Shown: piece by piece, positions 1,822-58,665 of the stretch
Layout: the number at the start of each line of letters is the position of its first letter
Numbering within the stretch: position 1 is the first letter of the stretch
NCBI RefSeq assembly: GCF_000143415.4
Contig: NW_003314322.1
Span: 1,128,067-1,192,066, forward strand
Length of the DNA: 64,000 bases
Origin: Selaginella moellendorffii
Lineage: Eukaryota > Plantae > Lycopodiophyta
Reading direction: 5' to 3'
Translations under genes and position numbers: made by a program
The notes under the pieces: generated by a model
Seen by the model: the letters and a program-made list of their open reading frames with translations, nothing else
The model's database searches: none
What the model was told of the DNA's origin: nothing

Positions 1822-2199
1822 ATGTTTTCGTATTTTAACTTTTTCGGTAAGCCCTTTTTTTGGAACAACGAGAAATAAAATTGAAACTAAGCAGAAATTA
1901 CAGAAACTCATAACTCAAAACTCTTGGTTAGACATGGCTCACATTTAGTTTGTTTTATCGGTTGATCTGCCCGTGCGGGTGCATTAGACTCGTGGAAACC
2001 ATGCTTTCGGTCTAGCTTCAAAATTAATGTCTAAAGCTAACACTGTTTCTTCTAAAGGTAAAAGAACCAGTTTTATAGTAGTAGTTAACATTTACATTCA
2101 CCTTATATAATAAAAAAAAAATAGAAATGTTTATTTAGTATTCTGACACTTAAAATTAAAACTGTTTACATTTTAAAATATAATTATTACAAGAGCATT

Positions 2200-4500
2200 A
2201 CCAAAAGCAAAGTAACTCCAATTTCATAGGCTCCATGGAAAGACAGAGCTATATCCTTCTAGGTTTTGTGTTTATAAGTGATATATAAGGTAGTTTTTAC
2301 ATATTTTTTGCTTCTAACTATTAATAAAATATTGAAATTATCATATTATTGAAATTTGAAATGATAATAATGTTTAAGGTAAATCCTTTTTGGTTTGATT
2401 TATTGCCATTAATTTGATGTTATTATTTTTTGCTGATGTGAGAGCGTGATTTGGATTGGAGAGCTATAGATGATGCAATCCTAGAAGATGTTCAAGGATT
2501 AAACATCTTTTTATTTTTTTTAATGTTGGGTATAAAATTTGATTTCTTTAGAAATAAATGAGAGGATGAATCAGAGATTTCATAGGGTGACTATCACTTA
2601 AAAATGCTACTTGATATGTCATCTTCCTCTACAGTAATAGTATATAGTTTTCATTCTTAGTTCAGTGTTTCATAAGTTAGGTTATCCTCATATAGCCAAG
2701 AATATTAAAGTCCTAAAACACTCTTGGTTTATTTATTGCTTAATATTATTTATGATATTATGTAATAATTTTGAAATTATAAAATTTAGATTCTTTAGTG
2801 AAAAGGAAGATTTTCTTGACCAATCAATTGTGAGGAATCCATTGCTTCCAACCATTCTTCAATACCTCATAAGTAGAGCTCTTCATCCACAAAGTTCCTT
2901 GCTTTAATGATATAATAAGCATGCAACAGTGGATTGCTTTTATTGAGAACTGGCTTGGAAGTGTTCCTACAAAGCTGAAGGCCACAACAACCTATAAATA
3001 TAATAAGCAATGATCAAGGTGGCACCTTCATTCTTATAACTTTGAAAAAGATAATGGAAAGACATCTAGGAGTGTCCAGTGGAAATTCTTATCTGCAAGA
3101 GATTGTTAGAGTAAGTTTTACTAGATTTTTTCTGTTTATGAGCTTCACCCATCATTAAAACTATCTAGTAATTGAAAAATTAATATGCAAGGTTAAATTT
3201 CTATAATTTATAAACATATTTAACTTTATAAATCTAAGATGATAGTATATACCAGAATATCTTAGGATATACCTAAGAATGTCAAAATTAACAATATCAC
3301 ACCCCACAACACCAAAAACTTGATTATGTGTGGCACAACAATAGAAACAACATTATTGGATGAGGACAATAAAGCATTTGCAACCTTAAGTTACACATTT
3401 ATGATGGTGTGAAATAGAAAAAGAAGGGAATGCAGTAGGAAGAGAAAATCTAATTGCTTCACTCTTAAAATTGGCAAAACCAAAAGTGTTTCTCTTTAAG
3501 AATGCCTCTCATCTTGACATAGAAATATGTACATCAATCCCTACTATACACAAGAATGGATGGCCATTCATTGATGGACAACCCATATACTATAATACTA
3601 TAGTTAATGTATTTACTTTGTAATATAATACATGTATTATCCCAATATTTTGCACTAAGATTCTACAAAATTGGTTCTTAGGATTCTTTTTCTTGTGGAA
3701 ATGCTGATGATCACTAGAACTTGCTTCTTCATCTATCCAACAGGTACTTAGCAAGTCTAAAGTCAAGAGTCATGGAAGCTCTAGAAGGAGTTTTTGACTG
3801 GAAAACTACATGACAGTGTTTTTTTGCATCATATCTTAACACTATGATAGGCCATCACAGGCACTATGTCCAGATTCCCCAAGCTAGACCATATAAAGAG
3901 TAGGATTTGATAACTTGTGTTGGTTGGCTTCTCTGCATTGAGATCACATCACTACAGCTATTGGCATCTTTGCTAGCAAAAAAATAAAAGAAGCCTTAGT
4001 AAAGAAACTTTAATCACTAAATAAATTTGGTAAGTAAATAGAATCAATACAAGAAATCTATAAAAAGAAACAAGTTCTATGCTACTTAAACTAAATACAT
4101 TGTTATTAGTAGTAGAAAATTTTATTCTCAAATTTCTGAGTAAATACTGAGGCTGTATACAATACTTCATTAAGAAATCAAAAAAATATTGACTAGATAT
4201 CTGAAGCCTCTTAAATAGTATTGAAAGAAGTAAGAGTATAGGTATAAGAAGCTTTATGACAGATGTAAGTAAAGTAAATAACATATACTTCCTGAATAAT
4301 TACTTATATACATACATAATAAAGAATAGTAGTTGAATTAAAATTACAATCACCTGTTTTTTTCTTTGTCATAACACTCATATTTTTGGTTGTCAAGGAC
4401 TAGAGGAAATAGAATGTTGCAAAGGGATGTAACACCTTCTACATTTCAATTGTGTTCATGATGCTTGAGGTTAGATAAAATTAAACATGGATCAATCAAT
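2200..4500 (-). pseudogene. Heavily eroded coding relic (gene or transposase) in AT-rich, CpG-poor DNA
   Basis: The minus-strand frame at about 3620-3970 is flanked by splice-like sites and interrupted by stops explainable as CAG/CGA/CAA deamination. Family not identifiable. Confidence 0.25.
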
Positions 4501-6522: not shown

Positions 6523-9500
6523 ATGGAGTCTGAGATGGACCCGAGATGGACCCAAGATGGACCCGAGATGGGACTCGAGATGGACCCGAGATGGAGTCCG
6601 AGATGGAGTCCGAGATGGACCCGAGATGGAGTCCGAGGTGGAGTCCAAGATGGACCTGAGATGGACCCGAGATGGAGTCCGAGATGGAGTCCGAGATAGA
6701 CCCGAGATGGAGTCCGAAGTCAAGACCGGGACCAAGACCGAGACCGGGACCGAGACCGAGACCGAGACCGAGACCGGGACCGAGACCGAGACCGAGATTG
6801 GGACCGAGACCGAGACCGAGGCCGAGGCCGAGGCCGAGTCCGAGTCCGAGTTCGAATCCGAGTCCGAGTCCGAGTCCGTGTCCGAGTCCGAGGCCGAGTC
6901 CGAGTTCGAGTCTGAGAGGGTGAAAGCCCAAAGCGTTCGTCTCCCAGACCCTAGGGGGTTTGGTGAGCTCCAAAAGTATAGTAAGGGGGAGGACTGCAGT
7001 GGAGCCAGTTTGGCCAGGAAAGGCCAGTTTGGCCCAGGAAGGCCGGACCCAGTGTTGGGTGATGATCTGCCCACTAGGAAGTCCAAGATTAGAGTGAACA
7101 CAAGCCGACAAGCGGGGTAGTTTGGTGAAGTGTTCAAGAGCCGGCTCTAGTTCCCTCGGGAGATTGACTGGCCGATGCTCCCAGTCCAAGTGTGGGTGGC
7201 ACTACCTACTTGGATACTTGTCGTGGCTCAACGGAACCTTGCTCTAAGCCCATGGCTAGAGCACCTAAATGCGAAAGGCGGGGAGAGTACCCATGAGGCT
7301 TGTGTAAGGCCACGGTGTTCCGAAATGTTGTCCCAAAGTCCCAGACTATGGAAAGGAAGAGGAGTAGCCCTCTGATGTGGTGACAAAGGACACGGTCACA
7401 TGGTGAGGAAGTCCCAAAGGACAGTTGGACTTAGACGTCGGGCCTGCGGGCCTTGATCCAGTGGCAGTGTTGGTGAACACAGCCATCGACAAAGAGGGAC
7501 TTAGTTGGGACTGGAAAAGAGATATTGAGGAAAGTTATTCCCTAAGTCTGCAAGTATCCTAAGGATGCTAAGGAGTGGATCTGGAATGATCACTCATGGA
7601 TGGATGGCCTAGTATATGAGAGACGGGATTGCAATGTAGGTGGTGTTGGACCATCAGTGTGACCAAGGTGAATAGGTATGGCCTCAGCGTAACGAGCTGA
7701 TATGTCGGTGGTACCTTGGGGTGTCGATCATGGGATCGGACACGTGGAGCACTTAGACCAAGTGCAAAGGTTGAGTGGCATGGATGCCATTCTCGGGGCT
7801 AGCAAGCCCCAAGTCCTAATTGGGACTTATGGAGGTTGTGAATGAGACTCCTCCAAGTGGTCGGAGGTGCGGTTAAGTGACTAAAGTAAAATGGAAAATT
7901 TAGTCGTTTACATTTCTCTTGTCACTTATCTTTTAGAAATGACTATGGCAACATTCCTTTCACAATGCATGATAGAGGATATATGATATGTAGCAACAGT
8001 GATATTTATGTTGTTTTCAAGAATTAGGAAAAAAAACCAAGCTTTTTTGTATCCAAGAATTATCAAAGGTCAAAAGGAGCACTAAAGCCAAAGCCAAAGG
8101 ACAATATGGTTGATTGCATTGATCGTATTATCAATCAATGAAACTTTAATCAAAGAGTTTAGAGGATTTTGCACACACCATTAATTTAAGTGATTTAATG
8201 ATAATGCGTTCATATTACATTAGATTTTGCAAACTCTAATTTAATAATTGAATTTAATGGTAATTTATTCAAATAAAAAATTAATATTAAATTAGTATAA
8301 TGCTATAATTAGAATTTCTTTTGGTTTCTTTATTTTGATAAAATTGTAATTCAACCCTTTTTGTAATATTAGGATTAAAATATTCAGAAATATTCTATAG
8401 AGCAAGTAGTGGCAATGCCCAAGGAGTAGTAAAGTGTCATGTTGACAAATGTACCATGGCAAAGACAAAATAAAAGATCAATTATTAGGTATTTTAAAGT
8501 ATTTCTAGCATATTTTAAAGTATAGAACATACACTAAATATTTTCAACCAATTTGCTGGGAATACTATAAATGATTAAAGTAGTTTATTATATTTACTAA
8601 AGGCTTTAACTCAATTAATGGTGGAAATCTTGACCTAGGTTCTTATAATGTTATTGTTAAAGGTCTTGGCCTAAATGTTGGAGATATTGTTGATATTTAT
8701 TTTTCTAAGATTTCTAAGTGTTATTACACAGCATAGAAAATTATTAATTTTTATGTCTATTGTTTTATAAATTTTGTTTTTATTATATTAGTGTATTTAA
8801 TTAAATTAAGATGTGATCACATGTATATAACAATCCTTGAAAATTGTAGTTGCATCCAATATTTTTCAACTAGTATGAGCTTTATGGATAAAGGCATCAA
8901 ATTTTGCCATGATGATATTGATATTAATATTTTTTAATTTCTTAACTAATATATATAAAATATATATATATATAATATAAAAAAATACTGTAAGCTTATA
9001 TAGTTAAAAATAAATTATTGAAAAAACAAAAGAAAATAATAGCTTCTTTTATTTTAAAAAATTATAATATTCTTATATTATTTATTAAAAAAATTAAAAA
9101 ATAATTTATGTAACCATAAACCCAAGATAGAATTTGTTTTGTAATGTGGTTTAATTTTATATTATATTTTACTTAGTAATTTTCTAAGCTAAAAAATCAA
9201 GAGAAAAAACTTAAATAAAATCAAAGAAAATTATGTTTTTTTATAAAGATTGAGTATGATTTATATGGTTCTCTTATATTTTGTAGATCTAACTTAAAAT
9301 ATTTATTAATTAATAATTTTAAACTTAATATTTAACTGCTGGATACTAATATTATAATAATTAGATTAAAAGTGTTTTCCATTTGAGAGTGTTTGAGAAA
9401 TATTCCAAGAATATTATCTTTGGATGGAGTAGATTAAATGTTATAATATGATCAATGGCTAAAATTTATTTTGTGGTCTTAAACCATTTTACTTTACCTG

Positions 9501-9841
9501 AGTAAAAAATGGATTCAAATTAAAAGTAAAATTCTGTAAGAAATTTCTTTCTTTTAGAGTATTTCAAGAATATTATATTTGGATGGGCTAGATTGAATGT
9601 TATGCTAAAATTAATTTGCTGTTGTTTACTTAAGGGAAATTAGTTTTATTTTCTAACTTTTACCCGTGGAAAAAACAATTTAAATTTAAAAAACAATTTC
9701 AGATAAAGCTACTGCTCCAGCTAAGTGTTTGAACAAGCCTCTGTGGGATAACTTCCAGGAGCCCCACTAATTTAAGTAGTTCAGCCACTCCAAAATAAAA
9801 GTGGCTCACAAATACATCGTGGGAGTGGATTGGATTGTGTT

Positions 9842-10100
9842 GCTATGCGTGGAAGAGTGTGCACAGCTAGAGAGATCTTTGAAAAGGTGGCAGACCATTT
9901 CGTCACACGTTTGAATGTTAGAATGCAATGATCATGGTCTACGCTTATAGAGGCTTTTGCTGCTCAAATCTCTCCAGATCCATTTATAGAGTACACCAGT
10001 GCGTTCGCCACCAATGTATCCACTGTCGTGAAAAGAGAAGCCCTGATTAGGGCCTCCCTCTTCTCACAGATGGCTGAGAAGGACTTGGCGAACTCTGCCG
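9842..10100 (+). pseudogene. Decayed PLS-type PPR fragment
   Basis: Translates as AMRGRVCTAREIFEKVADH ... *NAMIMVYAYRG ... ASLFSQMAEKDLA, matching PPR consensus A..IFD.M / WNAMI..YA..G, with stops and frameshifts. Confidence 0.6.
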
Positions 10101-25705: not shown

Positions 25706-27503
25706 TCATCCTTGAATGAGTGGGAGGCCAACAGCGATGACGATGAACGTTGCAGGAGCTCCAAATCTCAAGTGATTCCAGAAGGAGAGATTGTATGGAT
25801 GCTCCTCCATTCTGCTGGCCTGCTCGCTCACGATTATGTTGGCCGCCGATCCAACCAGCGTCAAGTTTCCAGCCACGGTGCTCACCCAGGCGAGGATCAG
25901 CCACGCTTTCTTCACGCTCGCTCCCTCGGTTGCGGCGGCCGAGGCTGCTACTCGAGCACCCAAGAGAAGAACTAGAATGAAATCCAAAAAGAAGAGATCA
26001 TGAGCAAAGAAGAATGCTCTCCTTCCAAACTTACCTGTAGGCACATTTGATGCAACGTTGGAGAGGAGGATTACCACCGCGGACAGAATTGCAATTCCAG
26101 CAGCCGTGTTGATGCGAGCGTGTGGTTCGACGGCGTCCCAGAGTTGTCCAGGAGCGCCAGTCCGGTTGAAACCACGCACTGCTATAAACATCCCCGAGAA
26201 GAATACCAGCAGGGAGTATGATACCTGGTGTAACCAGTGACGCAAGTAAGTACCACCTAAGAAAAAGATAGAAAAGTTTGGTGCTTGCCTGGTCGAGGCT
26301 CGGACTAGCATCCGTGAAGTCCAACACCATGAGAACAATCGCCGCGGTGATGGCCGTCCATGAGAGATCCAAGCCGTAAAGGAACGCCACCAGCATGCCG
26401 ATCGTCACCAGATACACGGACACCTTCCAGACCTTCTTCCGGAGTCTTTGAAACCGAGTGAGACTTGCCTGTGGAGTGTCCTGAAGCTCGACGCGAGGAG
26501 GAACTTGGAAGTGCCCAGAACCTCTCGGCTCTAGCCGCAGGATCTCGTTGATGGCAATGAGCGACGGGCGTTGAAGGTGGCGGGACGACGAAATTGATCT
26601 AGGCAGCGGAGGAGCTCCAGCTTCTTGCGTCAATTGTCCGTCGGGTGTGCTAGTAGATGCTGCTACACTCTTTCCAAGGTCGGGTGTATCAGCTGCTTGT
26701 CCTTCCAGGTCTGGAGTTTGGTAAGAACTGTCCTGCTGTTTTGGTTCTTGTCGATGATCTTGCTGCTGGATTCGTTGTTCTTGAGTGAAGCTCAATCCAG
26801 AATTGAGCAGCTCCATCTCCGGCCGCTGCTGCTCTAGTTTGATCGAGATGTCACTACTCTCAGCGTCCTCGTCCACACCTCGCAGCTTCTTCCAGTAGTA
26901 AGCCAGCAAGAGCAGCGTGTTTGCAATGAGTCCCAGGACCATGGCCGGCACCACCCCACCCAAAAACTTGCCAAACGCGATCTTGCTCTCCACGGCGATC
27001 ACCAAGTTCTGTGGATTGCCGATCGGGGTGGCCGCGGAGCCAATGTTGGCACTGGAAGCAAGAGCAATCAGAAAGGGCTGAGGGGGGAGCTTCTTTTCTC
27101 TGCATACCTCAAGAACAAACTGCGTGAGCACGACACAGGTGGTGTCATTGGTGAAGAGCGCGCTACACAGCGCCGAGAGGAGGCAAAGCCGACATAGTAG
27201 ATCCTTGCCGCCGAGGCTCCGCCACGAGAGGGCGTGGCCCAGGTACTTGAACGCGTCGGCCCTCTCCAGATAGACGCTTACGACCATGGTGCCGAAGAGG
27301 AGCCCCAGAATCGGCAGATCCACGGCCGCGAATGCCTCGGCCGGCGAGAGAACCTGGAAGACGACCATGAGGCAAGCGCCGAGCAGCGACCCGGCAGTCC
27401 TCCCGATCGGCAAGAACGGCACCACGGGCACCACCGCCATGATCCAGAAGACACCGAAGGCGAAGCATCCGAGGACGACCTTGGGCGTCGACGCCCACGC
27501 CAT
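25706..27503 (-). CDS. LSI2: Silicon efflux transporter Lsi2-like (ArsB/NhaD superfamily), three exons
   Basis: [62 protein letters not shown]. Confidence 0.93.
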
Positions 27504-27804: not shown

Positions 27805-30800
27805 TTGCGTCTAATGGGGGCGGCCCTTCTCCTTGTGATAGCCATTCTGCGCAGCTGCCACTCCTTGACGATCCACCTGTGCGATTTGGACGCCGGCGAG
27901 GAGAATGCTCTCGCGGCCCTGATGCAATCACGCATCGGTGTGTTCTATTCCTGCGATCGGTCGGGGCATGTTAAATCCTTGGAGTTGTATGCGAAGGATG
28001 CGAGAATCATCCCCAGGCAAGTTTGTGATTTTCCATGGCTGGTAAGCTTGTCCGTCGTTGGTGGTGAGAATTCCCTCCCCTCTTGCTCTTGCGGGATTGC
28101 TAGCCTCGAGCATCTAGATCTCTACTCGTTTTCGTCGGAGTCCTTTCTTCCAAGTTGTGGTCCCCGTGATCTTCCTAGCTTGGTGTTTCTTCAGTTTTAC
28201 AGTGTCAATGCCTCGATCCCCATGGACACGGTTTGCAGTCTCTTCCATCTCGAACAGCTCCATATTATAGAGAGTTATTTGTTTCGAGGATCCATAGCTT
28301 GTGTCTCCAGGCTTTTGCATCTTACCACCATTCAACTGACTAAGTGTGGCTTGATGCTTGAGATTCCATCGGAGTTATGTGAGCTAGAACGCTTGACAGA
28401 ACTGGATATGAGTCAAAACTCCCTCTTTGGTCCCATCCCTCCGTGTCTAGGATCCTTGAAAAATCTTACTGAGCTTCTTCTCTTCCAAAACACCCTGAGT
28501 GGGAAAATCCCAGCCTCTCTCGTCCAGCTTAAACTTCTCAAGAGCCTAGTCCTGTATGCCAATAACTTGGAAGGTCCTATTCCACCACTTCAAGGCAATA
28601 AGATCGAGGTTTTGGATCTATCAAGTAACAACCTCACAGGTACATTGCCGGATGTCATAGCAAACTTATCGAGCTTGAGAGTACTCTCAGCAGCCAATAA
28701 CTCACTTAGCGGCGTTCTTCCTCGTTTCGCCAGCAGCTCCAGGATACAGGAACTTGATCTTTCAACAAACGAGTTTTATGGGCCGCTCCAGCCAACTATA
28801 TGCAACCTCACAAGGCTAAGTGTTCTCAGGCTTTCACGTAACTATCTCAACTCGGACTTCTCGTTAACTCCCAATTGTTTCCAGAGCATAACAGAGTTGG
28901 ACTTGCACGCCAACCAGCTCTATGGACGCTTGCCTCCAGGTTTGCTGAGCTTATCCACTTTGGAGAGAATAGATCTTTCTATGAATCAGTTCACAGGCTC
29001 TCTACCAGCACTAGGCCACAACATGACCGGTTTGACATCCATGGAACTATCCAACAACTGGCTAACAGGAACTCTGGAAGACTTGCGTTTTAACGAGCAG
29101 TGCAATCTTGGAGTTTTAGACTTGTCACACAATGACATCGGTGGCAGCATACCAGGCTACATAAGCAACTGCAGCGGATTAAGTGTGCTAAATCTCAATG
29201 GCAATTCTTTTCGAGGGACTATTCCATGGGAACTCGGCAACTTGGTTGGCTTGCGTACGGTAATGCTTCGGGGTAACAGGCTAGGCGGGGAACTCCCAGA
29301 GAGTTTAGGAAACTTGACAGTGTTAACTGTTCTAGAACTGAGCGAAAACAGTTTTACAGGGAAGCTGGAATCGACGGGTATAAACAGGCTGCGGTATCTC
29401 AACCTTCTTCTACTCAGGTCGAACGCCTTCGATGGATCAATTCCAAACTGGATTGGGAGCTTTTCGGCTTTCCTCTCTGGAATAGATCTTTCACACAACA
29501 GGTTCTCTGGACAACTCTCTCGTGACATAGATATGACGGGCTTGGGAATCATTCCCCTTCCAAGGTTGCCATTGCCGCTACTTGGCTTGCCAATGGTAAA
29601 CGACGTACTTATCAATCTGAAAGGACAGCTTCGTCGTTATGATAGCATGCCATACCAGATAAGTTTTCTCGATCTCTCCAGCAACTTTTTAGAGGGAGAG
29701 CTTCCGGACTCTTTTGGTAACATGCAGCGGCTCATGTACCTGACACTCTCGGGAAACAGGTTCAGTGGAAAGATCCCGGCTAGTTTTGGAAGACTTTCAG
29801 TGCTTGAGGGCCTAGACTTGACAAGGAACACACTATCTGACTCAATTCCGGAGACTCTCGTCAATCTTACTAAGCTGGGATACTTCAACGTTTCTTACAA
29901 CAATCTCTCAGGAACAGTTCCCTCCAAAGGCCAGTTTTCTACTTTCGGCTGCGATTCATATATCGGAAACAAGTACCTCAACCTGCCCTGCTCCCAAGTT
30001 CTAGAAAGCGGGCTTGTGCAGAGAAAGATGGTAATTGGTTGGCATCGCGGGTTGATACTTGGTTTGATAGGCGTGGCCATTGGCTGCGTCGTACTTCTGG
30101 TTGGGTTTGCGTTCCTCTACTACTACAAATGGAAAGTCAGAACTCCAGAAGCAGCTGGCGAGCAGAAACTTTGCTCGATCTCGTCAAGCATGAGAAAAAG
30201 CGAGCTCTGGACCGCCACCCAAGGCTTCGACGCCAAAAACATAATCGGAACAGGCGCTTCGAGCACTGTTTACAAAGGCAGGCTAGCCCGGGATGGAAAG
30301 TGTGTGGCCATCAAAGTTTTCAGGCCTCGCAAGGATGATTGGAACTCGGCAACGGAAATTGAAGCCTTGAGCAGAATTAAGCACAGGAATTTGGTCCGTT
30401 TTCTCGGGGTCTGCTGGGAGGACGACTGTAAGGCACTTGTGTTTGATCTCATGCCGAATGGAACACTCGACTCACATCTCCATGACGTTTCCGAGAAGGT
30501 TAAGGTTTTCACCATGAAACAAAGGCTGAAGGTTGCTCTCGGAGTGGCTTACGCTGTTCGATACCTCCACCACGAACTCAATGCCGGCGAAGCAATCGTT
30601 CACGGAGACTTGAAGCCGAGCAACATTTTCCTGGATGACGAGATGGAAGCGCACGTCGGAGACTTTGGAGCGGCCAGACTCTTGCAAGCTGTTAATGCCT
30701 ACGAGGATTCCAAGTCGGAGTTGAGAGGCTCCCTTGGCTACATGCCACCAGGTACGCTTTACAGCTTCTTTTTAAACTTTTTCGATGCTTCGAGTTTCCA

Positions 30801-31127
30801 GAGTTAGCGGTCTCGAACAAGCTTTGCGCGAAGACCGATGTCTACAGCTATGGAATCATCCTTCTGGAAATGCTCACGGGCAAGCGACCCACGAATAGCA
30901 TGTTTAAAGACGGGAGCACCCTTCACGACTGGGCTCGTTCCAGCTTTCCAAATCTGGAAATCTTGCTGGATCCAACACTGTTGTCTCAGGAAGAGCCTCT
31001 CGAGTTCCCGGTGGCAAGAGAACTCTTCCGGCTCGGCATTCTCTGTAGCAGCGAGCAGCGCGAGCACCGGCCAACTATGGACTTCGTCACGTCGATGCTA
31101 GCTCAAATAAGCAGCCTGGGAAACTGA
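27805..31127 (+). CDS. LRR receptor kinase: island-domain ectodomain, transmembrane helix, non-RD kinase; one intron at about 30752-30801
   Basis: Signal peptide, about 20 plant extracellular LRRs, TM GLILGLIGVAIG, kinase motifs VAIK, HGDLKPSN, DFG, GYMPP|E, DVYSYGII. Confidence 0.95.
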
Positions 31128-31162
31128 ATGGTAAGCCTTCTTTAAAGAAGAAAACCCGACGC

Positions 31163-32790
31163 TCATATGCTTATATCTTTGTAGCGCTTGAAAATCTCCT
31201 CTACTCCTGCGGTAACTTCCTCCGGAAGGGGCCTCGGAACTTGGAAGGCATCGATGTTCTCTTTGAGCTGGTCCATCGTCGTGGCACCAATGATGCTGCT
31301 GGTCACAAAGGGACGATCGCGCACAAATCCGAGAGCAAGCTGGACTGGAGTTAAGCCGTGCTGCTCGCCGAGGCTCACGTATTTGTTTACGGCTTCCTGG
31401 CGAACAAAAACGGCACACACATCGCGTAAGTATGATGGAAGCTTGTCATGACCGACCTGTGCAAGAGATGTCTTATATCGTCCCATGTATCCAGGGAATG
31501 CGTTCAATCGTCCTCGCTTCGCAGCGGGGCTGTCAGGATTGGCGTACTTTCCACTCAACGCACCGCCAGCCAGTGGAGAGTACGCCAGCAATCCAACGTT
31601 GCAGTTGTGATGGCTACACACCTCCGTTAAGTCGACTGTTCACAGGAAGAGTTGCCAGACGAAGTCCACGAGATTGATTGGATGCGAGTTTGTACCTTCC
31701 AAGCGGCAGCGAACGAGCAAGCTGTAGCTGTTTTGGATGCTCACGATCTTGGGAAGGCCGAGCTTCTCCGCAGCATCAGTGAATCTCATGACGCCGAACG
31801 ATGTTTCATTTGAGACGCCAATGTAGCGAACCTGGCGTATCGTGAGAACGATGAATCAAAACAAGCTTTCAAGCGAGAACCTTTCCCTCCTGAATGACCG
31901 AGTTGAGAGCTTCCAGTTGCTCCTCGAACGACACGCTCTCTCGCCACCTCGATACATCGTAGAAAAACTCGCCAAAGAGGGGCACGTATCGATCAGGCCT
32001 GAATCAAACTATATAGGAGAAGAAGCAAACAAAAAGATAGAGGAACCATACCAGTGTATCTGTAGAAGATCAATGTGGTCCGTCCCGAGGCGCAGCAAGC
32101 TCTTCTCCACACTTTCTTTCACGTTTGCTGCGTCGACTCTCACAGTCTTTCCACTCTCACGGAGGTAAGATGATCGATCGGAATAGCCTGAAACTTTAGT
32201 CGCGATTATTACCTGGAGAAACCAACACGCATGCCAACAAGATAGTTTGCAAAAGTAAAAAGAAAAAGGAGAAAAATATAAACTAGGCAAACAAAAGCAT
32301 CAAGAAATCTAGAGCTTACCTTGTCGCGCGATTGGTTTTTCAGCCAGGAGCCAATGTAGCGATCTGTCCGCCCTTGTGTCTCTTTCGCCGGAGGAACAGG
32401 ATACTGTCAGACAAGCCATGTAAGATACTTCCCAAGATAATACCAAAGCATTCTATACCATCTCGGCAGTGTCGAGTATGTTGATTCCATTCTCGAAGGC
32501 ATAGCTTAGTTGCTCGTGAGCGTCGGCCTCGCTGTTTTGGACCCCCCAGGTCATCTACAAGCAAGCCGCAAGCAGCGCGATGGATTGACACTCTCAAAAT
32601 CCAAGCAAAAAAAAACAGTGCAACTTACAGTTCCCAGCGTGACTTCGCTGACGACGAGCTCCGAGTCGCCGAGCTTGTTGTAGCGCATCGAGGCGCTCGC
32701 ACGGGCGGCTACATTCCTCCTGGATGTAAATCGAAAATTCCTGCCAGCATTGAGAGCTTGCAATGGAGGAGGAGGAGCCACGGTAGCCAT
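31163..32790 (-). CDS. Aldo-keto reductase (Tas-like) with transit-peptide-like N-terminus, multi-exon
   Basis: LGDSELVVSEVTLGT, DTAE, IIATKV, SLLRLGTDHIDLLQIHW, LLAYSPLAGG, SSIIGATTMDQLKEN. Stop is 35 bp from the convergent RLK stop. Confidence 0.93.
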
Positions 32791-33463: not shown

Positions 33464-34548
33464 GGAAGCTTGTCATGACGGACCTGTGCAAGAGATGTAT
33501 GATATCGTTCCCTGTATCCAGGAAACATGTTCAATCGTCCTCACTTCGCAGCAGGGCTGTCAGGATTGGCAGACTTTCCACTCAATGCACCGCCAGCCAG
33601 TGGAGAGTACACCAGTAGTCCGACGTTGCAGTACTTTGTGATGGCTTAAGTAGACTGTTCACAGGAAAAGTTGGCAGACGAAGTTCACCAGATTAATAGT
33701 TTGTTCCTTCGAAGCGGCAGCAAACAAGCAAGCTATAGCTGTTTTGGATGCTCACGATCTTGGGAAGGCCGAGCTTCTCTGCAGCATCGGTGAATCCCAT
33801 GACACCAAACGATGTTTCGTTTGAGACACCAATGTAGCGAACCTGGAGTATCGTGAGAAAGATGAATCAACAAGCGAGAACCTTTCCCTCTTGAATGACC
33901 GAGTTGAGAGCTTCCAGTTGCTCCTCGAACGACACGCTCTCTTGCCACTTCCATATATCATAGAAAAACTCGCCAAGAACTCTCGCGGAGGTAAGATGAT
34001 CGATCGGAATAGCCTGAAACTTTAGTCGCGATTATTACCTGCAGAAACCAACACGCAGCAAAAGTAAAAAGACAAAGGAGAAAAAGATAAACTAGGCAAA
34101 CAAAAGCATTAAGAAATCTAGAGCTTACCTTGCGTGATTGGTTTTTTGCCAACGTAGCGATCTGTCCGCCCTTGTCTCTTTGGACAAAGGAACAGGATAC
34201 TATCAGACAAACCATGTAAGATACTTCCCAAGATAATACCAAAGCATTGCATTTCACTCTATACCATCTCGGCAGTGTCGAGTATGTTGATCCCATTCTT
34301 GAAGGCATAGCTTAGCTGCTCGTGAGCATCTGCCTCGCTGTTTTGGACCCCCCAGGTCATCTACAAGAAAGCCTTGATCAATCAAAATCCAAGCAAAAAA
34401 ACAAGTGCAGCTTACATTTCCCAGTGTGACTTTGCTGACAATGAGCTCTGAGTTGCCGAGCTTGTTGTAACGCATCGAGGAGCTGGGGCTCGCTGGGCAG
34501 CTACATTTCTCCTGGATGTAAATTGAAAATTCTTGCCAGCACTGAGAG
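33464..34548 (-). pseudogene. Tandem partial duplicate of the aldo-keto reductase gene
   Basis: Colinear with 31437-32758 including introns, but lacks the start region and last exon, and has an internal deletion near 33980 plus frameshifts. Confidence 0.9.
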
Positions 34549-35534
34549 CGGAGCCCTGAACTTGATTACAAATCCAAAGCATAGGAAATTAATATAATAC
34601 TAATATTAATATAAGTATAAATATTATAATAATGTAATTATAAATTAATATTAAATTAAGCATGAATTTTATCAGTTTGAAACACAACATCTATTGATAA
34701 ATTTTGACTTATAACAACTTTGAAATTGGTGATGTAAATACATTCACTCTCAAGCGGCTTAGAGGACTCAAATACCTTCTTTGGCAAATATTTAATTTAA
34801 AACTGCATGTTGTAAGATAATCAAATTGTGGCAATACTCTTAAAAAATGGTAATATATAATAATTTTAACCACTGTGAATAATTATATTTATTCTGATAC
34901 TTATTTAATTTTTTTTCTAAAGAATAAAAAACGTATTAATACTTTGTTTCATTTGTGAAGAAAAAATTAAAACAACAATTTCTCTTATAATTTTCTTGGT
35001 TTTCTTAAAAAAATCCTATAGATATCTAGAATATACTTGGCTATTTTAAATATTCTACCATCTAACTATTTATTTAGATTAATCTTGTATTTATAATAAT
35101 TTATACCTTTCCTAAACACTTCCTAGTATATTTTTATTTATTCTAGTGGTGCAATAAGATTAATCTTGATTTATAAATTATAAACATATTTATAATTATC
35201 GATCAATTGAATTATTCAAAAATATTAAATAAGAATGACACTACTATTAAGTAAACCAAGCATTTCTGCATTCAATGTGCAATAAATTATTATAATTACT
35301 ATCACTCTTATAGAATTTATAGATGAAATAAATTCTTTAACAGCCCATGATAGATCTTAGTAGCATATAATATACACTAATTTATTCCATATTACAACAT
35401 GGCTACTAGCTATAATTTTTTTTATCCTAGTAAAGCATCTTCAAAGACTTATTTCAGTCCAGGCTAGATTCTTGCTAGTATAAATATATATCAATTAAAT
35501 TATCATGGCTAATCAAAGTATAATATTAAAACAA

Positions 35535-35963
35535 TTACCATTCATAAGCTCTAACAGGTATAGACCATCCTTGAGATGTATGGGTTTGAAATATTGCATA
35601 TCCAAAAACATGCCATTCAACACCAGCTTTACCTCCATATTCAGGATTTCCTTGTTTATATGCTGTTATAACTTTGGATTTCCCATCACTTACAATCTTT
35701 AAATTGCACCAAAATTCAGTTGTGCCAAACCATCTATCATTGAATGTAAAAGGGGGATACATTGCTCTATCCTGGATAACATACTTTTGGATATCATCAT
35801 CCTTGGATTGGCAATGTACTTCTAGTGGAGAACCTACTCTATTTATAACATGTATTGTGGTACCATAGGCATTAATGGTTGCATTATTACATTCACACAT
35901 AGATATTATATCAATTAGAAATACTAACAAAATCACCTTGTAGTTGTATTTCGCTAGAGCCAT
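35535..35963 (-). CDS. S-protein homologue (SPH, self-incompatibility S1 family) secreted small protein
   Basis: Signal peptide, then TTIHVIN...LEVHCQSKDDD...FTF...FGTTEFWC and C-terminal YEW. Confidence 0.85.
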   Translation of the reverse strand: MALAKYNYKVILLVFLIDIISMCECNNATINAYGTTIHVINRVGSPLEVHCQSKDDDIQKYVIQDRAMYPPFTFNDRWFGTTEFWCNLKIVSDGKSKVITAYKQGNPEYGGKAGVEWHVFGYAIFQTHTSQGWSIPVRAYEW

Positions 35964-36067
35964 AACAATGTTGTATATTAAGTTTCATTTATAATAAGTA
36001 AGTTGAATATTTCGTTTTTAATAATGATATTTAAATAAAACAAAATTTGTTTTGTTCCATTCCAGCT

Positions 36068-58072: not shown

Positions 58073-58665
58073 TGTAAGCAACCAAAGGGAACGACTCGAG
58101 AGACAATCCATGGGGTTCAAATATAAAGGGAAAGGGCCCATGAACAAGAGTGCACCCCCTTTTCCAATTGGTTAAGGGTCTTGGGATAATTAGAGTTAAG
58201 CGTCCTTGGGTTTGAATAGTACTGGGCTGGGTGACCTCCCGGGAAGTCCAAACTCAGGAGTTTACATTTGGTATCAGAGGGGTCTCGGGTCCGACTCTGT
58301 TGGTTGGCTAAGGGAATCGCACCACATGTTGATTGACATCTGGCTGGTCCAGTTTGCTCCCGCTGGGCTCGACCCGAGGGGTAGGGTGTCAAGAGAGCGA
58401 GGCTCTCGGGAGAGCTGCGGCTCTCAGCTTCCGTTCACGAGGGCGTGAACTTGCAGGGAAGCGTGGTGGATTGTAAGCAACCAAAGGGAACGACTCGAGA
58501 GACGATCCATGGGGTTCAAATATAAAGGGAAAGGGCCCATGAACAAGAGTGCACCCCCTTTTCCAATTGGTTAAGGGTCTTGGGATAATTAGAGTTAAGC
58601 GTCCTTGGGTTTGAATAGTACTGGGCTGGGTGACCTCCCGGGAAGTCCAAACTCAGGAGTTTACA
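58073..58665 (+). mobile_element. Element C: 593-bp TRIM with 5S rRNA-derived LTR segment (Cassandra-like)
   Basis: 194-bp LTRs at 58073-58266 and 58472-58665 (1 mismatch); TSD TAATC; tRNA-iMet PBS TGGTATCAGAG at 58269; 205-bp non-coding interior. Confidence 0.93.
58194..58249 (+). promoter_or_regulatory. 5S rRNA internal control region (box A - intermediate element - box C) in the TRIM LTR; second copy at 58593-58648
   Basis: AGTTAAGCGTCCTTGGGTTTGAATAGTACTGGGCTGGGTGACCTCCCGGGAAGTCC matches the 3' half of plant 5S rRNA as recalled. Confidence 0.88.

What the first reader, a model, noticed from the sequence alone, without database searches (positions are those of the whole stretch)
27805..31127. 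Receptor kinase joining an RLP-type island+4-LRR ectodomain to an FLS2-like non-RD kinase
Seen: the LRR stack is broken by a non-LRR island ending in K-x5-Y (KGQLRRY, 29620-29640), followed by exactly four LRRs, a GQFSTF cap and a GxxxG-containing TM helix. The kinase has HGDLKPSN (non-RD), ELWTATQGFDAKNIIGTGASSTVYKG, and one intron after GYMPP. Known: island+4LRR, Kx5Y and QxxT typify kinase-less LRR-RLPs and the RD-kinase LRR-Xb group (PSKR/BRI1), whereas the kinase features typify LRR-XII immune receptors (FLS2/EFR), which lack islands. Inference: a domain-swapped immune receptor, in effect an RLP with its own non-RD kinase that may not need SOBIR1.
Basis: partly seen in the sequence, partly recalled or inferred. 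Interest (0 to 1): 0.75.

Follow-up and report, generated by a model that had tools for sequence, protein, structure and literature searches.

The report
Island-bearing receptor with immune-type kinase
A Selaginella gene encodes an intact, expressed cell-surface receptor that joins the island-plus-four-repeat outer domain typical of kinase-less immune receptors to an FLS2/EFR-type kinase, and the same rare design also occurs in another lycophyte, in ferns and in conifers, so it is an old receptor type rather than a one-off accident.

Summary
The genome is Selaginella moellendorffii. The gene (ATG 27814-30751, 50-nt intron, 30802-31127) encodes XP_024545094.1, 1087 aa, which NCBI misnames "GSO1". 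All the cited motifs are at the stated places. A spliced RNA contig confirms the intron.

The kinase sits in the LRR-XII clade (100/97). Grouping it with Xb kinases is rejected (AU p=0.0004). Its intron lies at the AP|E codon, as in XI and XII genes.

The ectodomain has a 48-aa island ending in KGx4Y in the same register as receptor-like proteins (RLPs). Four LRRs, a QxxT cap and two GxxxG motifs in the TM helix follow. The AlphaFold2 model shows the island as a loop plus a beta-hairpin, not an LRR. The last-four-LRR tree alone leans to RLPs but is not decisive (AU p=0.19).

This is not a unique recent swap. The same architecture occurs in Diphasiastrum, Adiantum, Pinus and Cryptomeria, and in none of the angiosperm XII hits. 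Published source data count 36 such XII receptors among 19,626 and do not discuss them.

A second copy in the same genome, 96% identical overall, differs mostly in the island. An earlier scan note (s1-337512) probably describes it.

The immune role and independence from SOBIR1 remain inference. Verdict: a real, rare variant of a known kind, of moderate interest.

The parts
27814..27864 (+). Start codon and predicted signal peptide (MGAALLLVIAILRSCHS, aa 1-17)
   Evidence: Read from the sequence. Identical to the N-terminus of database protein P0001.
27865..29514 (+). N-terminal part of the ectodomain: irregular LRRs, then about 16 regular plant-type LRRs (aa 18-567). Pfam detects no LRRNT_2 cap.
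   Evidence: Pfam LRR_1, LRR_8 and LRR_14 hits. PDB sequence matches to GSO1, FLS2, BRL2 and RXEG1 ectodomains.
29515..29658 (+). Island domain (aa 568-615): a Pro/Leu-rich loop followed by a beta-hairpin that ends in KGQLRRY (Kx5Y, 29620-29640)
   Evidence: RLP profile 8.3 bits against XII profile 0.1. AF2 gives a loop plus strands at aa 597-602 and 605-609, pLDDT 54-77. Eight of the 27 differences from the second genomic copy fall here.
29659..29946 (+). C3 region: exactly four LRRs (aa 616-711), the last ending in the QxxT cap GQFSTF (29929-29946)
   Evidence: four LRR strands at aa 618, 642, 666 and 690. C3 tree and profiles.
29947..30048 (+). Extracellular juxtamembrane stretch (aa 712-745), net charge +2 over the last 20 residues
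   Evidence: mean charge is +3.9 in XII and -2.9 in RLPs.
30049..30126 (+). Transmembrane helix GLILGLIGVAIGCVVLLVGFAFLYYY (aa 746-771) with GxxxGxxGxxxG
   Evidence: GxxxG is present in 4% of 195 XII TM helices and 80% of 30 RLP helices.
30127..30751 (+). Intracellular juxtamembrane stretch and kinase subdomains I-VIII. Contains K834 (VAIK), the HGDLKPSN catalytic loop at 30601-30624 (non-RD), DFG at aa 950-952, and GYMPP at the exon end.
   Evidence: Pfam Pkinase 4.3e-31. Kinase tree places it in XII at 100/97. AU test rejects Xb, p=0.00036.
30752..30801 (+). Intron, 50 nt, GT-AG, phase 1, inside the E codon of the (A/P)PE motif
   Evidence: Sequence. Spliced RNA contig at depth 61 in run X1. 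Same position in Marchantia and soybean XII genes and in Selaginella and Marchantia XI genes; absent in an EMS1-like Xb gene.
30802..31127 (+). Exon 2: kinase subdomains IX-XI and the C-terminus (aa 980-1087) with the stop codon
   Evidence: Pfam kinase C-lobe hit. tblastn of P0001 is 100% identical.

Best explanation
This is an intact, transcribed, single-pass receptor kinase gene of Selaginella moellendorffii. It belongs to a rare and so far undiscussed architecture class. The ectodomain ends in the island-domain-plus-four-LRR (ID+4LRR) module known from kinase-less LRR receptor-like proteins (RLPs) and from the Xb receptor kinases BRI1 and PSKR. The TM helix carries GxxxG motifs. The cytoplasmic part is a non-RD kinase of the LRR-XII (FLS2/EFR/Xa21) clade.

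Shown here: the gene structure, its expression and splicing, the XII placement of the kinase, and the island with its RLP-type motifs. Relatives with the same architecture also exist in a second lycophyte, in ferns and in conifers.

Inferred mechanism: a ligand binds the LRR surface together with the island. The C3 region, with the QxxT loop and the island lysine, then recruits a SERK/BAK1-type co-receptor, as in RXEG1, PSKR1 and BRI1. The receptor's own non-RD kinase, not the adaptor kinase SOBIR1, is transphosphorylated and starts a pattern-triggered-immunity-like output.

On origin, the most likely reading is that this gene is a divergent member of an old lineage of island-bearing XII receptors of non-flowering vascular plants, not a recent Selaginella-specific swap.
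For: Gene and expression:
- One continuous ORF plus one exon equals XP_024545094.1 at 100%.
- RNA contigs cover most of the gene and splice 30751|30802.
- The catalytic K834, D932 and DFG motif are intact.

Kinase:
- The best 120 hits are nearly all named At3g47570, Xa21 or EFR-like, at 38-46% identity.
- The IQ-TREE tree puts it in the XII clade at 100/97, apart from the XI/MIK2-like clade (97/93) and the Xb clade (100/99).
- The AU test rejects Xb, p=0.00036.
- The Xb reference sequences were checked against BRI1 in the PDB: 319 and 265 bits.
- The intron at AP|E is shared with XI and XII genes and is absent in an Xb gene.

Ectodomain:
- The island ends in KGx4Y in the RLP register, and the cap is QxxT.
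- The TM helix has GxxxG.
- The AF2 model shows a loop plus a hairpin, then four LRRs.
- The top Foldseek matches are BRI1 and BRL2, with RXEG1 and PSKR1 also high in the list.
- On the C3 tree it lies on the RLP/PSKR side of a 93/88 split.

Old lineage:
- The same architecture with non-RD XII kinases occurs in P0373 (Diphasiastrum), P0402 and P0495 (Adiantum), P0029 (one continuous 1232-aa ORF on a Logan contig), P0118 (Pinus) and P0169/P0496 (Cryptomeria).
- The fern and conifer members form one clade in both the kinase tree (99/93) and the C3 tree (98/90).
- Joining the query's kinase to that clade is not rejected (AU p=0.059).
- Both halves of the query are about equally distant from everything else, at 33-46% identity.
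Against: - In the best kinase tree the query does not sit with the fern and conifer island-bearing clade. It sits near an island-less Cryptomeria XII receptor (weak, 90/51) and the FLS2-like group.
- Monophyly of all six island-bearing kinases is rejected (AU p=0.005). More than one origin, or many island losses, are needed.
- C3 alone does not discriminate well for the query: +5.7 bits, AU p=0.19.
- The island loop has low model confidence (pLDDT 54-77).
- The extracellular juxtamembrane stretch is basic, unlike RLPs.
- No ligand, co-receptor contact, kinase activity or immune output was tested. Sampling of relatives was limited to the best 120-150 hits per search.
Confidence: 0.6

Rival explanations
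1. A lineage-specific domain swap. Within the lycophyte lineage, an unequal crossover or gene conversion inside the long first exon joined the ID+C3(+TM) part of an RLP- or Xb-type gene to an XII receptor kinase gene. Similar events happened independently in other lineages.
For: - Island-bearing kinases fall in three places in the kinase tree, and their joint monophyly is rejected (AU p=0.005).
- RLP-like features run from the island through the TM helix (GxxxG) and stop before the kinase.
- Conversions between LRR-RLK clades are documented in maize (PMC7318236).
Against: - No donor-like sequence exists on either side. The nearest relatives of both halves are only 33-46% identical, including the ordinary Selaginella XII receptors P0404 and P0480.
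- The query plus the fern and conifer clade is not rejected as one group (p=0.059).
- The juxtamembrane stretch between C3 and the TM helix is RLK-like, which does not fit a single clean junction.
- The C3 tree is unresolved.
Confidence: 0.22
2. A relic of the ancestor. ID+4LRR joined to a XII-like non-RD kinase is the ancestral state, from which immune LRR-RLPs arose by loss of the kinase and ordinary XII receptors arose by loss of the island. The query and its fern, conifer and lycophyte counterparts are survivors of that state.
For: - Island-bearing members lie in the basal, poorly resolved part of the XII clade and as sister to core XII.
- Their islands carry the lysine motifs that are found in over 75% of RLP islands and under 5% of Xb islands (PMC10834447).
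- Three of the six have GxxxG in the TM helix.
Against: - It needs six or more independent island losses on the kinase tree, against three gains.
- The C3 tree is a polytomy.
- The published model derives RLPs and Xb from a common ID+C3 ancestor (PMC10834447, PMC13006823).
- No bryophyte example was seen here. The Marchantia XII receptor P0049 has no island.
Confidence: 0.13
3. Convergence. The island is a lineage-specific insertion, or a degenerated LRR, in an ordinary XII ectodomain, and its resemblance to RLP islands is superficial.
For: - The first 30 island residues are Pro/Leu-rich low-complexity sequence with low pLDDT.
- C3 profile scores for RLP and XII are close, 120.4 against 114.7 bits.
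- The AU test does not exclude the XII/XI side (p=0.19).
- Kx5Y alone is a weak motif.
Against: - KG-x4-Y lies 17 residues before the DLS of the next LRR, exactly as in RLPs.
- The local sequence NLKGQLRRY nearly matches NIKGQARRF of an RLP.
- The QxxT cap, the count of four LRRs and the GxxxG motifs co-occur.
- The same combination recurs in five other non-flowering plant proteins.
Confidence: 0.05

Closest known systems
LRR-RLK subgroup XII (FLS2, EFR, Xa21; clade XIIa)
   Same: - The kinase lies inside the clade (100/97).
- The catalytic loop is non-RD: HGDLKPSN, a form also found in 27 of the 213 related kinase domains tallied from the first two searches.
- The juxtamembrane motif E-L-x-x-A-T-x-G-F is present.
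- The gene has two exons with a phase-1 intron at AP|E, as in Marchantia and soybean XII genes.
   Different: - Ordinary XII ectodomains are uninterrupted LRR stacks with a G[VI]F.N cap, a strongly basic juxtamembrane stretch and no GxxxG in the TM helix.
- This protein has a 48-aa island, a QxxT cap and GxxxGxxGxxxG.
- Pfam detects no LRRNT_2 cap.
- Only 36 of 19,626 XII receptors in Ngou et al. 2024 have ID+4LRR.
Immune LRR receptor-like proteins of the ID+4LRR clade (Cf-9, RLP23, RXEG1, EIX2)
   Same: - The island sits before the last four LRRs.
- Kx5Y is in the same register, the cap is QxxT, and GxxxG is in the TM helix.
- The best collinear C-terminal ectodomain hits are mostly EIX2- or RLP12-named RLPs.
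- It lies on the RLP side of the C3 tree.
   Different: - It has a full, apparently active kinase in place of a short tail.
- The juxtamembrane stretch is basic rather than acidic.
- It has no Yx8KG motif.
- RLPs signal through SOBIR1. Here that would not be required, which is an inference.
LRR-RLK subgroup Xb (BRI1/BRL, PSKR1/2, PSY1R, EMS1)
   Same: - ID+4LRR on a receptor kinase, with a QxxT cap.
- The top Foldseek matches of the model are BRI1 and BRL2 ectodomains.
- The expected mode of SERK recruitment through C3 is the same.
   Different: - The kinase is not Xb (AU p=0.00036). It is non-RD rather than RD.
- It has the AP|E intron, which the tested Xb gene lacks.
- The island has the Kx5Y motif, which is rare (under 5%) in Xb islands (PMC10834447).
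Island-bearing XII receptors of other non-flowering plants found here (Adiantum MCO5601966.1, Pinus PITA_30571, Cryptomeria XP_059068627.1, Diphasiastrum KAJ7517770.1)
   Same: - RLP-type island ending in KGx4[YF].
- Four LRRs, except three in the Cryptomeria model.
- A QxxT/S cap in four of the five. Diphasiastrum has G in place of the Q.
- A non-RD XII kinase.
   Different: - They are only 31-35% (ectodomain) and 36-43% (kinase) identical to the query.
- The fern and conifer proteins form their own clade. The query and the Diphasiastrum protein are placed elsewhere in the basal part of XII.

Membership tests
LRR-RLK-XII (defined by the kinase) | Kinase domain groups inside the XII clade | tested here: met
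   IQ-TREE, 62 kinases: XII clade including the query at 100/97; XI/MIK2-like at 97/93; Xb at 100/99. The 120 best kinase hits are nearly all XII-named.
LRR-RLK-XII (defined by the kinase) | Non-RD catalytic loop (H-C/G/S-D) | tested here: met
   HGDLKPSN at aa 930-937. Among the 213 related kinase domains tallied from the first two searches, 143 have C, 27 G and 5 S at this position.
LRR-RLK-XII (defined by the kinase) | Uninterrupted LRR ectodomain without an island | tested here: not met
   48-aa non-LRR island before the last four LRRs. At that position the XII profile gives 0.1 bits here, against 30 bits for a true XII receptor.
LRR-RLK-XII (defined by the kinase) | Gene structure: one phase-1 intron at the AP|E codon | tested here: met
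   30752-30801, confirmed by RNA. Same position in Marchantia XII and soybean XII genes, and also in XI genes, so it is not exclusive to XII.
LRR-RLP, ID+4LRR clade | Island domain placed before exactly four C-terminal LRRs | tested here: met
   Sequence parsing and the AF2 model.
LRR-RLP, ID+4LRR clade | Lysine motifs Kx5Y and/or Yx8KG in the island | tested here: met
   K603-x5-Y609 is present in the RLP register. Yx8KG is absent (M594). The definition needs only one of the two (PMC10834447).
LRR-RLP, ID+4LRR clade | QxxT/S loop in the last LRR | tested here: met
   GQFSTF at aa 706-711. XII receptors have G[VI]F.N at that position.
LRR-RLP, ID+4LRR clade | Acidic extracellular juxtamembrane stretch | tested here: not met
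   Net charge +2 over the last 20 residues. RLP mean is -2.9 and XII mean is +3.9.
LRR-RLP, ID+4LRR clade | GxxxG motif(s) in the TM helix | tested here: met
   Two motifs here. Found in 80% of 30 RLPs and 4% of 195 XII receptors.
LRR-RLP, ID+4LRR clade | No kinase domain (short cytoplasmic tail) | tested here: not met
   A full kinase of about 300 aa. It is therefore not an RLP.
LRR-RLK-Xb | Xb-type RD kinase | tested here: not met
   The loop is HGD. The AU test rejects the query plus Xb as one clade, p=0.00036. The higher PDB score to BRI1 than to FLS2 is also seen for a true XII control, so it is not diagnostic.
LRR-RLK-Xb | ID+4LRR ectodomain | tested here: met
GSO1/SGN3 (LRR-XI), the name given by NCBI | Kinase in the XI clade and a long uninterrupted LRR ectodomain | tested here: not met
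   The kinase lies outside the XI clade and the ectodomain has an island. The name reflects only generic LRR similarity to 6s6q.
SERK-dependent receptor (functional class) | Ligand-induced binding of a SERK co-receptor through C3 | not testable with these tools
   No Selaginella SERK sequence was on hand for a complex prediction. The claim is inferred from the QxxT and Kx5Y motifs only.

The most novel reading that the evidence does not exclude
Island-bearing XII receptor kinases of lycophytes, ferns and gymnosperms are the surviving kinase-bearing relatives of immune LRR-RLPs. On this reading the kinase that RLPs lost was a XII-type non-RD kinase, SOBIR1 later took over its role, and flowering plants kept only the kinase-less form.
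Probability: 0.15. Interest if true: 0.85.

Novelty: new variant of a known kind. Interest (0 to 1): 0.55.

Why it matters
Current accounts (Ngou et al. 2024; the 2026 Plant Journal review) describe two branches from the ancestral island-plus-C3 ectodomain. One is the kinase-less immune RLPs, which need SOBIR1. The other is the developmental Xb kinases.

A third combination, the same module on an immune-type non-RD XII kinase, is tabulated in that paper's source data (36 of 19,626) but is not discussed. Here it is shown to be encoded by an intact, expressed gene. It also recurs in lycophytes, ferns and conifers, with a well-supported fern-plus-conifer clade.

This offers natural test cases for two open questions:
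- whether an RLP-type ectodomain can signal through its own kinase without SOBIR1;
- what kind of kinase the ancestors of RLPs carried.

It could also guide the design of self-contained chimeric immune receptors. None of this is proven by sequence alone.

Tried and rejected
1. PDB ranking of the kinase (BRI1 190 bits, FLS2 164 bits) looked like evidence for Xb. A bona fide XII control gave the same order (180 against 172). It was rejected as non-diagnostic.

2. My first LRR-gap scan flagged about 60 XII receptors as 'island+4'. All were single 25-residue LRRs that the pattern had missed. I raised the threshold to gaps of 30 or more residues and read the hits by eye.

3. Angiosperm XII proteins with 84-92% coverage of the island region in the word search (P0009, P0340, P0098) turned out to be slid LRR alignments without any island.

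4. Summed HMMER scores in the region and representative searches are inflated by repeated LRR matches, so I used collinear single stretches instead.

5. C3-only tests, both the profile log-odds and the AU test, were not decisive for the query.

6. A search for paralogues within the window found none.

7. DNA for the Diphasiastrum, Adiantum and Selaginella relatives could not be fetched. Of the island-bearing relatives, only P0029 (unnamed Logan contig) is checked against DNA.

Exon 1 and exon 2 were searched by reference. The full-length sequence used afterwards is the stored database protein P0001, which one search returned and which matches both exons at 100%.

Full report
**Identity and gene model**

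The window is from Selaginella moellendorffii. Exon 1, translated by reference, matches XP_024545094.1 (P0001, 1087 aa) at 100%. NCBI names that protein "LRR receptor-like serine/threonine-protein kinase GSO1".

The ORF list starts at TTG 27805, but the real start is ATG 27814, which gives a signal peptide MGAALLLVIAILRSCHS. Exon 1 runs uninterrupted from the signal peptide through the whole ectodomain, the TM helix and kinase subdomains I-VIII, to 30751. A 50-nt GT-AG phase-1 intron (30752-30801) splits the E codon of the PPE motif. Exon 2 ends with the stop at 31127.

The full-length sequence used later is the stored protein P0001.

RNA evidence comes from two runs kept as contigs. They cover most of the gene at low depth (2-9x). 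One contig at depth 61 splices exactly at 30751|30802, so the gene is transcribed and the model is right.

**The observation**

- KGQLRRY at aa 603-609 (29620-29640)
- four 24-residue LRRs at aa 616-711, ending in GQFSTF
- a TM helix with GxxxGxxGxxxG
- ELWTATQGF...GTGASSTVYKG
- HGDLKPSN (30601-30624)
- GYMPP at the exon end

K834 (VAIK), D932 and DFG 950-952 are intact, so nothing argues for a dead kinase.

An AlphaFold2 model of aa 430-748 was built on a 58-row alignment (mean pLDDT 87, pTM 0.87). It shows regular LRRs, then a loop and a beta-hairpin (aa 597-602 and 605-609, pLDDT 54-77) in place of one repeat, then exactly four LRR strands and a cap. The island is therefore not a degenerate LRR, although the confidence of the loop is only moderate. 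The top Foldseek matches are BRI1 and BRL2, with RXEG1 and PSKR1 also high in the list. All plant LRR ectodomains score similarly, however.

**The kinase is XII**

A region search with the kinase returns almost only proteins named At3g47570, At3g47110, Xa21 or EFR-like, at 38-46% identity.

I built a careful IQ-TREE tree of 62 kinases:
- The query and all other island-bearing kinases fall inside the XII clade (100/97).
- XI and MIK2-like kinases form a separate clade (97/93). It includes MpRGI-like and a Selaginella At5g63930-like protein, named.
- Xb kinases form another separate clade (100/99).

The Xb references were validated by their PDB scores to BRI1, 319 and 265 bits. The AU test rejects the query plus Xb as one group (p=0.00036).

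The query's best PDB kinase hit is BRI1 (190 bits), ahead of FLS2 (164). A true XII control gives the same order (180 against 172), so this ranking says nothing.

The intron position is an independent character. The phase-1 intron at AP|E is at the same codon in a Marchantia XII gene, a soybean XII gene, and Selaginella and Marchantia XI genes. An EMS1-like Xb gene reads straight through that site.

**The ectodomain end is of the RLP/Xb type, but the tree alone does not prove it**

In the alignment, the query's island end (VLINLKGQLRRY, 17 residues before the next DLS) lines up with RLP islands such as LILNIKGQARRF. XII receptors have a plain LRR there. Profile scores for that segment are 8.3 bits (RLP) against 0.1 (XII). 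A true XII receptor scores 30 against the XII profile.

The cap GQFST is a QxxT motif. XII receptors have G[VI]F.N at that position. GxxxG occurs in 80% of 30 RLP TM helices and 4% of 195 XII helices, and the query has two. The juxtamembrane stretch, however, is basic (+2; RLP mean -2.9, XII mean +3.9).

The evidence from the four LRRs alone is weaker:
- The ML tree puts the query on the RLP/PSKR side of a 93/88 split, inside a polytomy.
- Profile log-odds favour RLP by only 5.7 bits.
- Forcing the query to the XII/XI side costs 10.7 lnL, AU p=0.19, which is not significant.

**Not unique to Selaginella**

I read the C-terminal ectodomains of all kinase-bearing hits. This turned up the same architecture with non-RD XII kinases in five other sources:
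- Diphasiastrum complanatum (KAJ7517770.1): 70-aa island, Kx5Y, catalytic loop HLD.
- Adiantum nelumboides (MCO5601966.1 and MCO5607966.1): Yx8KG and Kx5F, four LRRs, NQFDSF cap, one GxxxG.
- An unnamed Logan contig (SRR8210167): one continuous 1232-aa ORF, so not a gene-model fusion.
- Pinus taeda PITA_30571.
- Cryptomeria japonica XP_059068627.1: three LRRs after the island in the current model.

None of the angiosperm XII hits has an island. Apparent high-coverage matches were slid LRR alignments. Selaginella also has ordinary island-less XII receptors, P0404 and P0480.

The relationships among the island-bearing kinases are as follows:
- The fern and conifer proteins form one clade in both the kinase tree (99/93) and the C3 tree (98/90). 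They are 41% identical to each other over their full length. This is a conserved family older than the fern and seed-plant split.
- In the best tree the query's kinase lies elsewhere in the basal part of XII.
- Monophyly of all six island-bearing kinases is rejected (p=0.005).
- The query plus the fern and conifer clade is not rejected (p=0.059).

**Literature**

Ngou et al. 2024 (PMC10834447) state that 94.7% of receptor kinases with ID+4LRR are Xb, and that the lysine motifs mark RLP islands (over 75%) rather than Xb islands (under 5%).

Their source data list the following counts as total, with ID, and with ID+4LRR:

| Subgroup | Total | With ID | With ID+4LRR |
|---|---|---|---|
| XII | 19,626 | 874 | 36 |
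| Xb | 4,463 | 2,326 | 2,070 |
| RLP | 26,435 | 16,334 | 14,700 |

The combination has thus been counted, but it is not discussed there or in the 2026 review, which describes only two branches, RLP and Xb.

**A second copy**

The 90% cluster of P0001 holds XP_024533224.1, on another scaffold. It is probably the other haplotype or a recent duplicate, and probably the locus of the earlier scan note s1-337512.

It differs at 27 positions. Eight of them lie in the 48-aa island (Fisher p=9e-6). K603 and Y609 are conserved. This fits either a fast-evolving ligand-contact surface or a weakly constrained loop. DNA of that copy would be needed to tell the two apart.

Its gene model also reads the intron through as 17 extra residues, which looks like an annotation error.

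**Conclusion**

Shown here:
- a real, expressed receptor kinase;
- an LRR-XII non-RD kinase joined to an ID+4LRR ectodomain end with RLP-type motifs;
- membership in a rare architecture class that is also present in another lycophyte, in ferns and in conifers.

Inferred:
- SERK recruitment through C3 and the island;
- signalling through its own kinase without SOBIR1;
- an immune role.

Open: whether the class has one origin, several origins by recombination, or is a relic of the ancestor of RLPs.

Noticed in passing
window 28940-28989: One low-depth RNA contig (3.6x, run X1) skips a 50-nt GT-AG stretch inside exon 1. Removing it would shift the frame after about aa 375 and truncate the receptor. 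Another run reads straight through. This may be a minor alternative or noisy splice.
   Followed up: partly
window 30860-31200 and beyond: RNA depth rises from 2-9x over the receptor body to 61-96x at its 3' end, in contigs that run on past 31200. The convergent aldo/keto reductase gene on the minus strand (exon at 31163-31621, PF00248) probably overlaps the receptor's 3' end.
   Followed up: partly
window 26031-27503 (-): A 490-aa ORF directly upstream, on the opposite strand, is a CitMHS-type (citrate/arsenite-pump-like) membrane transporter (PF03600, 2.6e-61).
   Followed up: partly
P0515 (XP_024533224.1), another scaffold of the same genome: A second copy of the receptor, 96% identical overall. 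Eight of its 27 substitutions lie in the 48-aa island (Fisher p=9e-6). Its gene model translates the intron as 17 extra residues, which is probably an annotation error.
   Followed up: partly
P0496 (Cryptomeria japonica XP_059068627.1): This protein is named 'BAK1-like' by its source. It is in fact an island-bearing XII-type receptor kinase, with only three LRRs after the island in the current model. P0001 itself is misnamed 'GSO1'.
   Followed up: partly
window 2001-4000, 8001-10000, 34001-36000: Three AT-rich blocks (25-31% G+C) lie in a window that otherwise has 46-64% G+C. They were not examined.
   Followed up: no
window 58073-58665: Another first-stage note on this window reports a TRIM retroelement that carries a 5S rRNA. 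It was not examined here.
   Followed up: no
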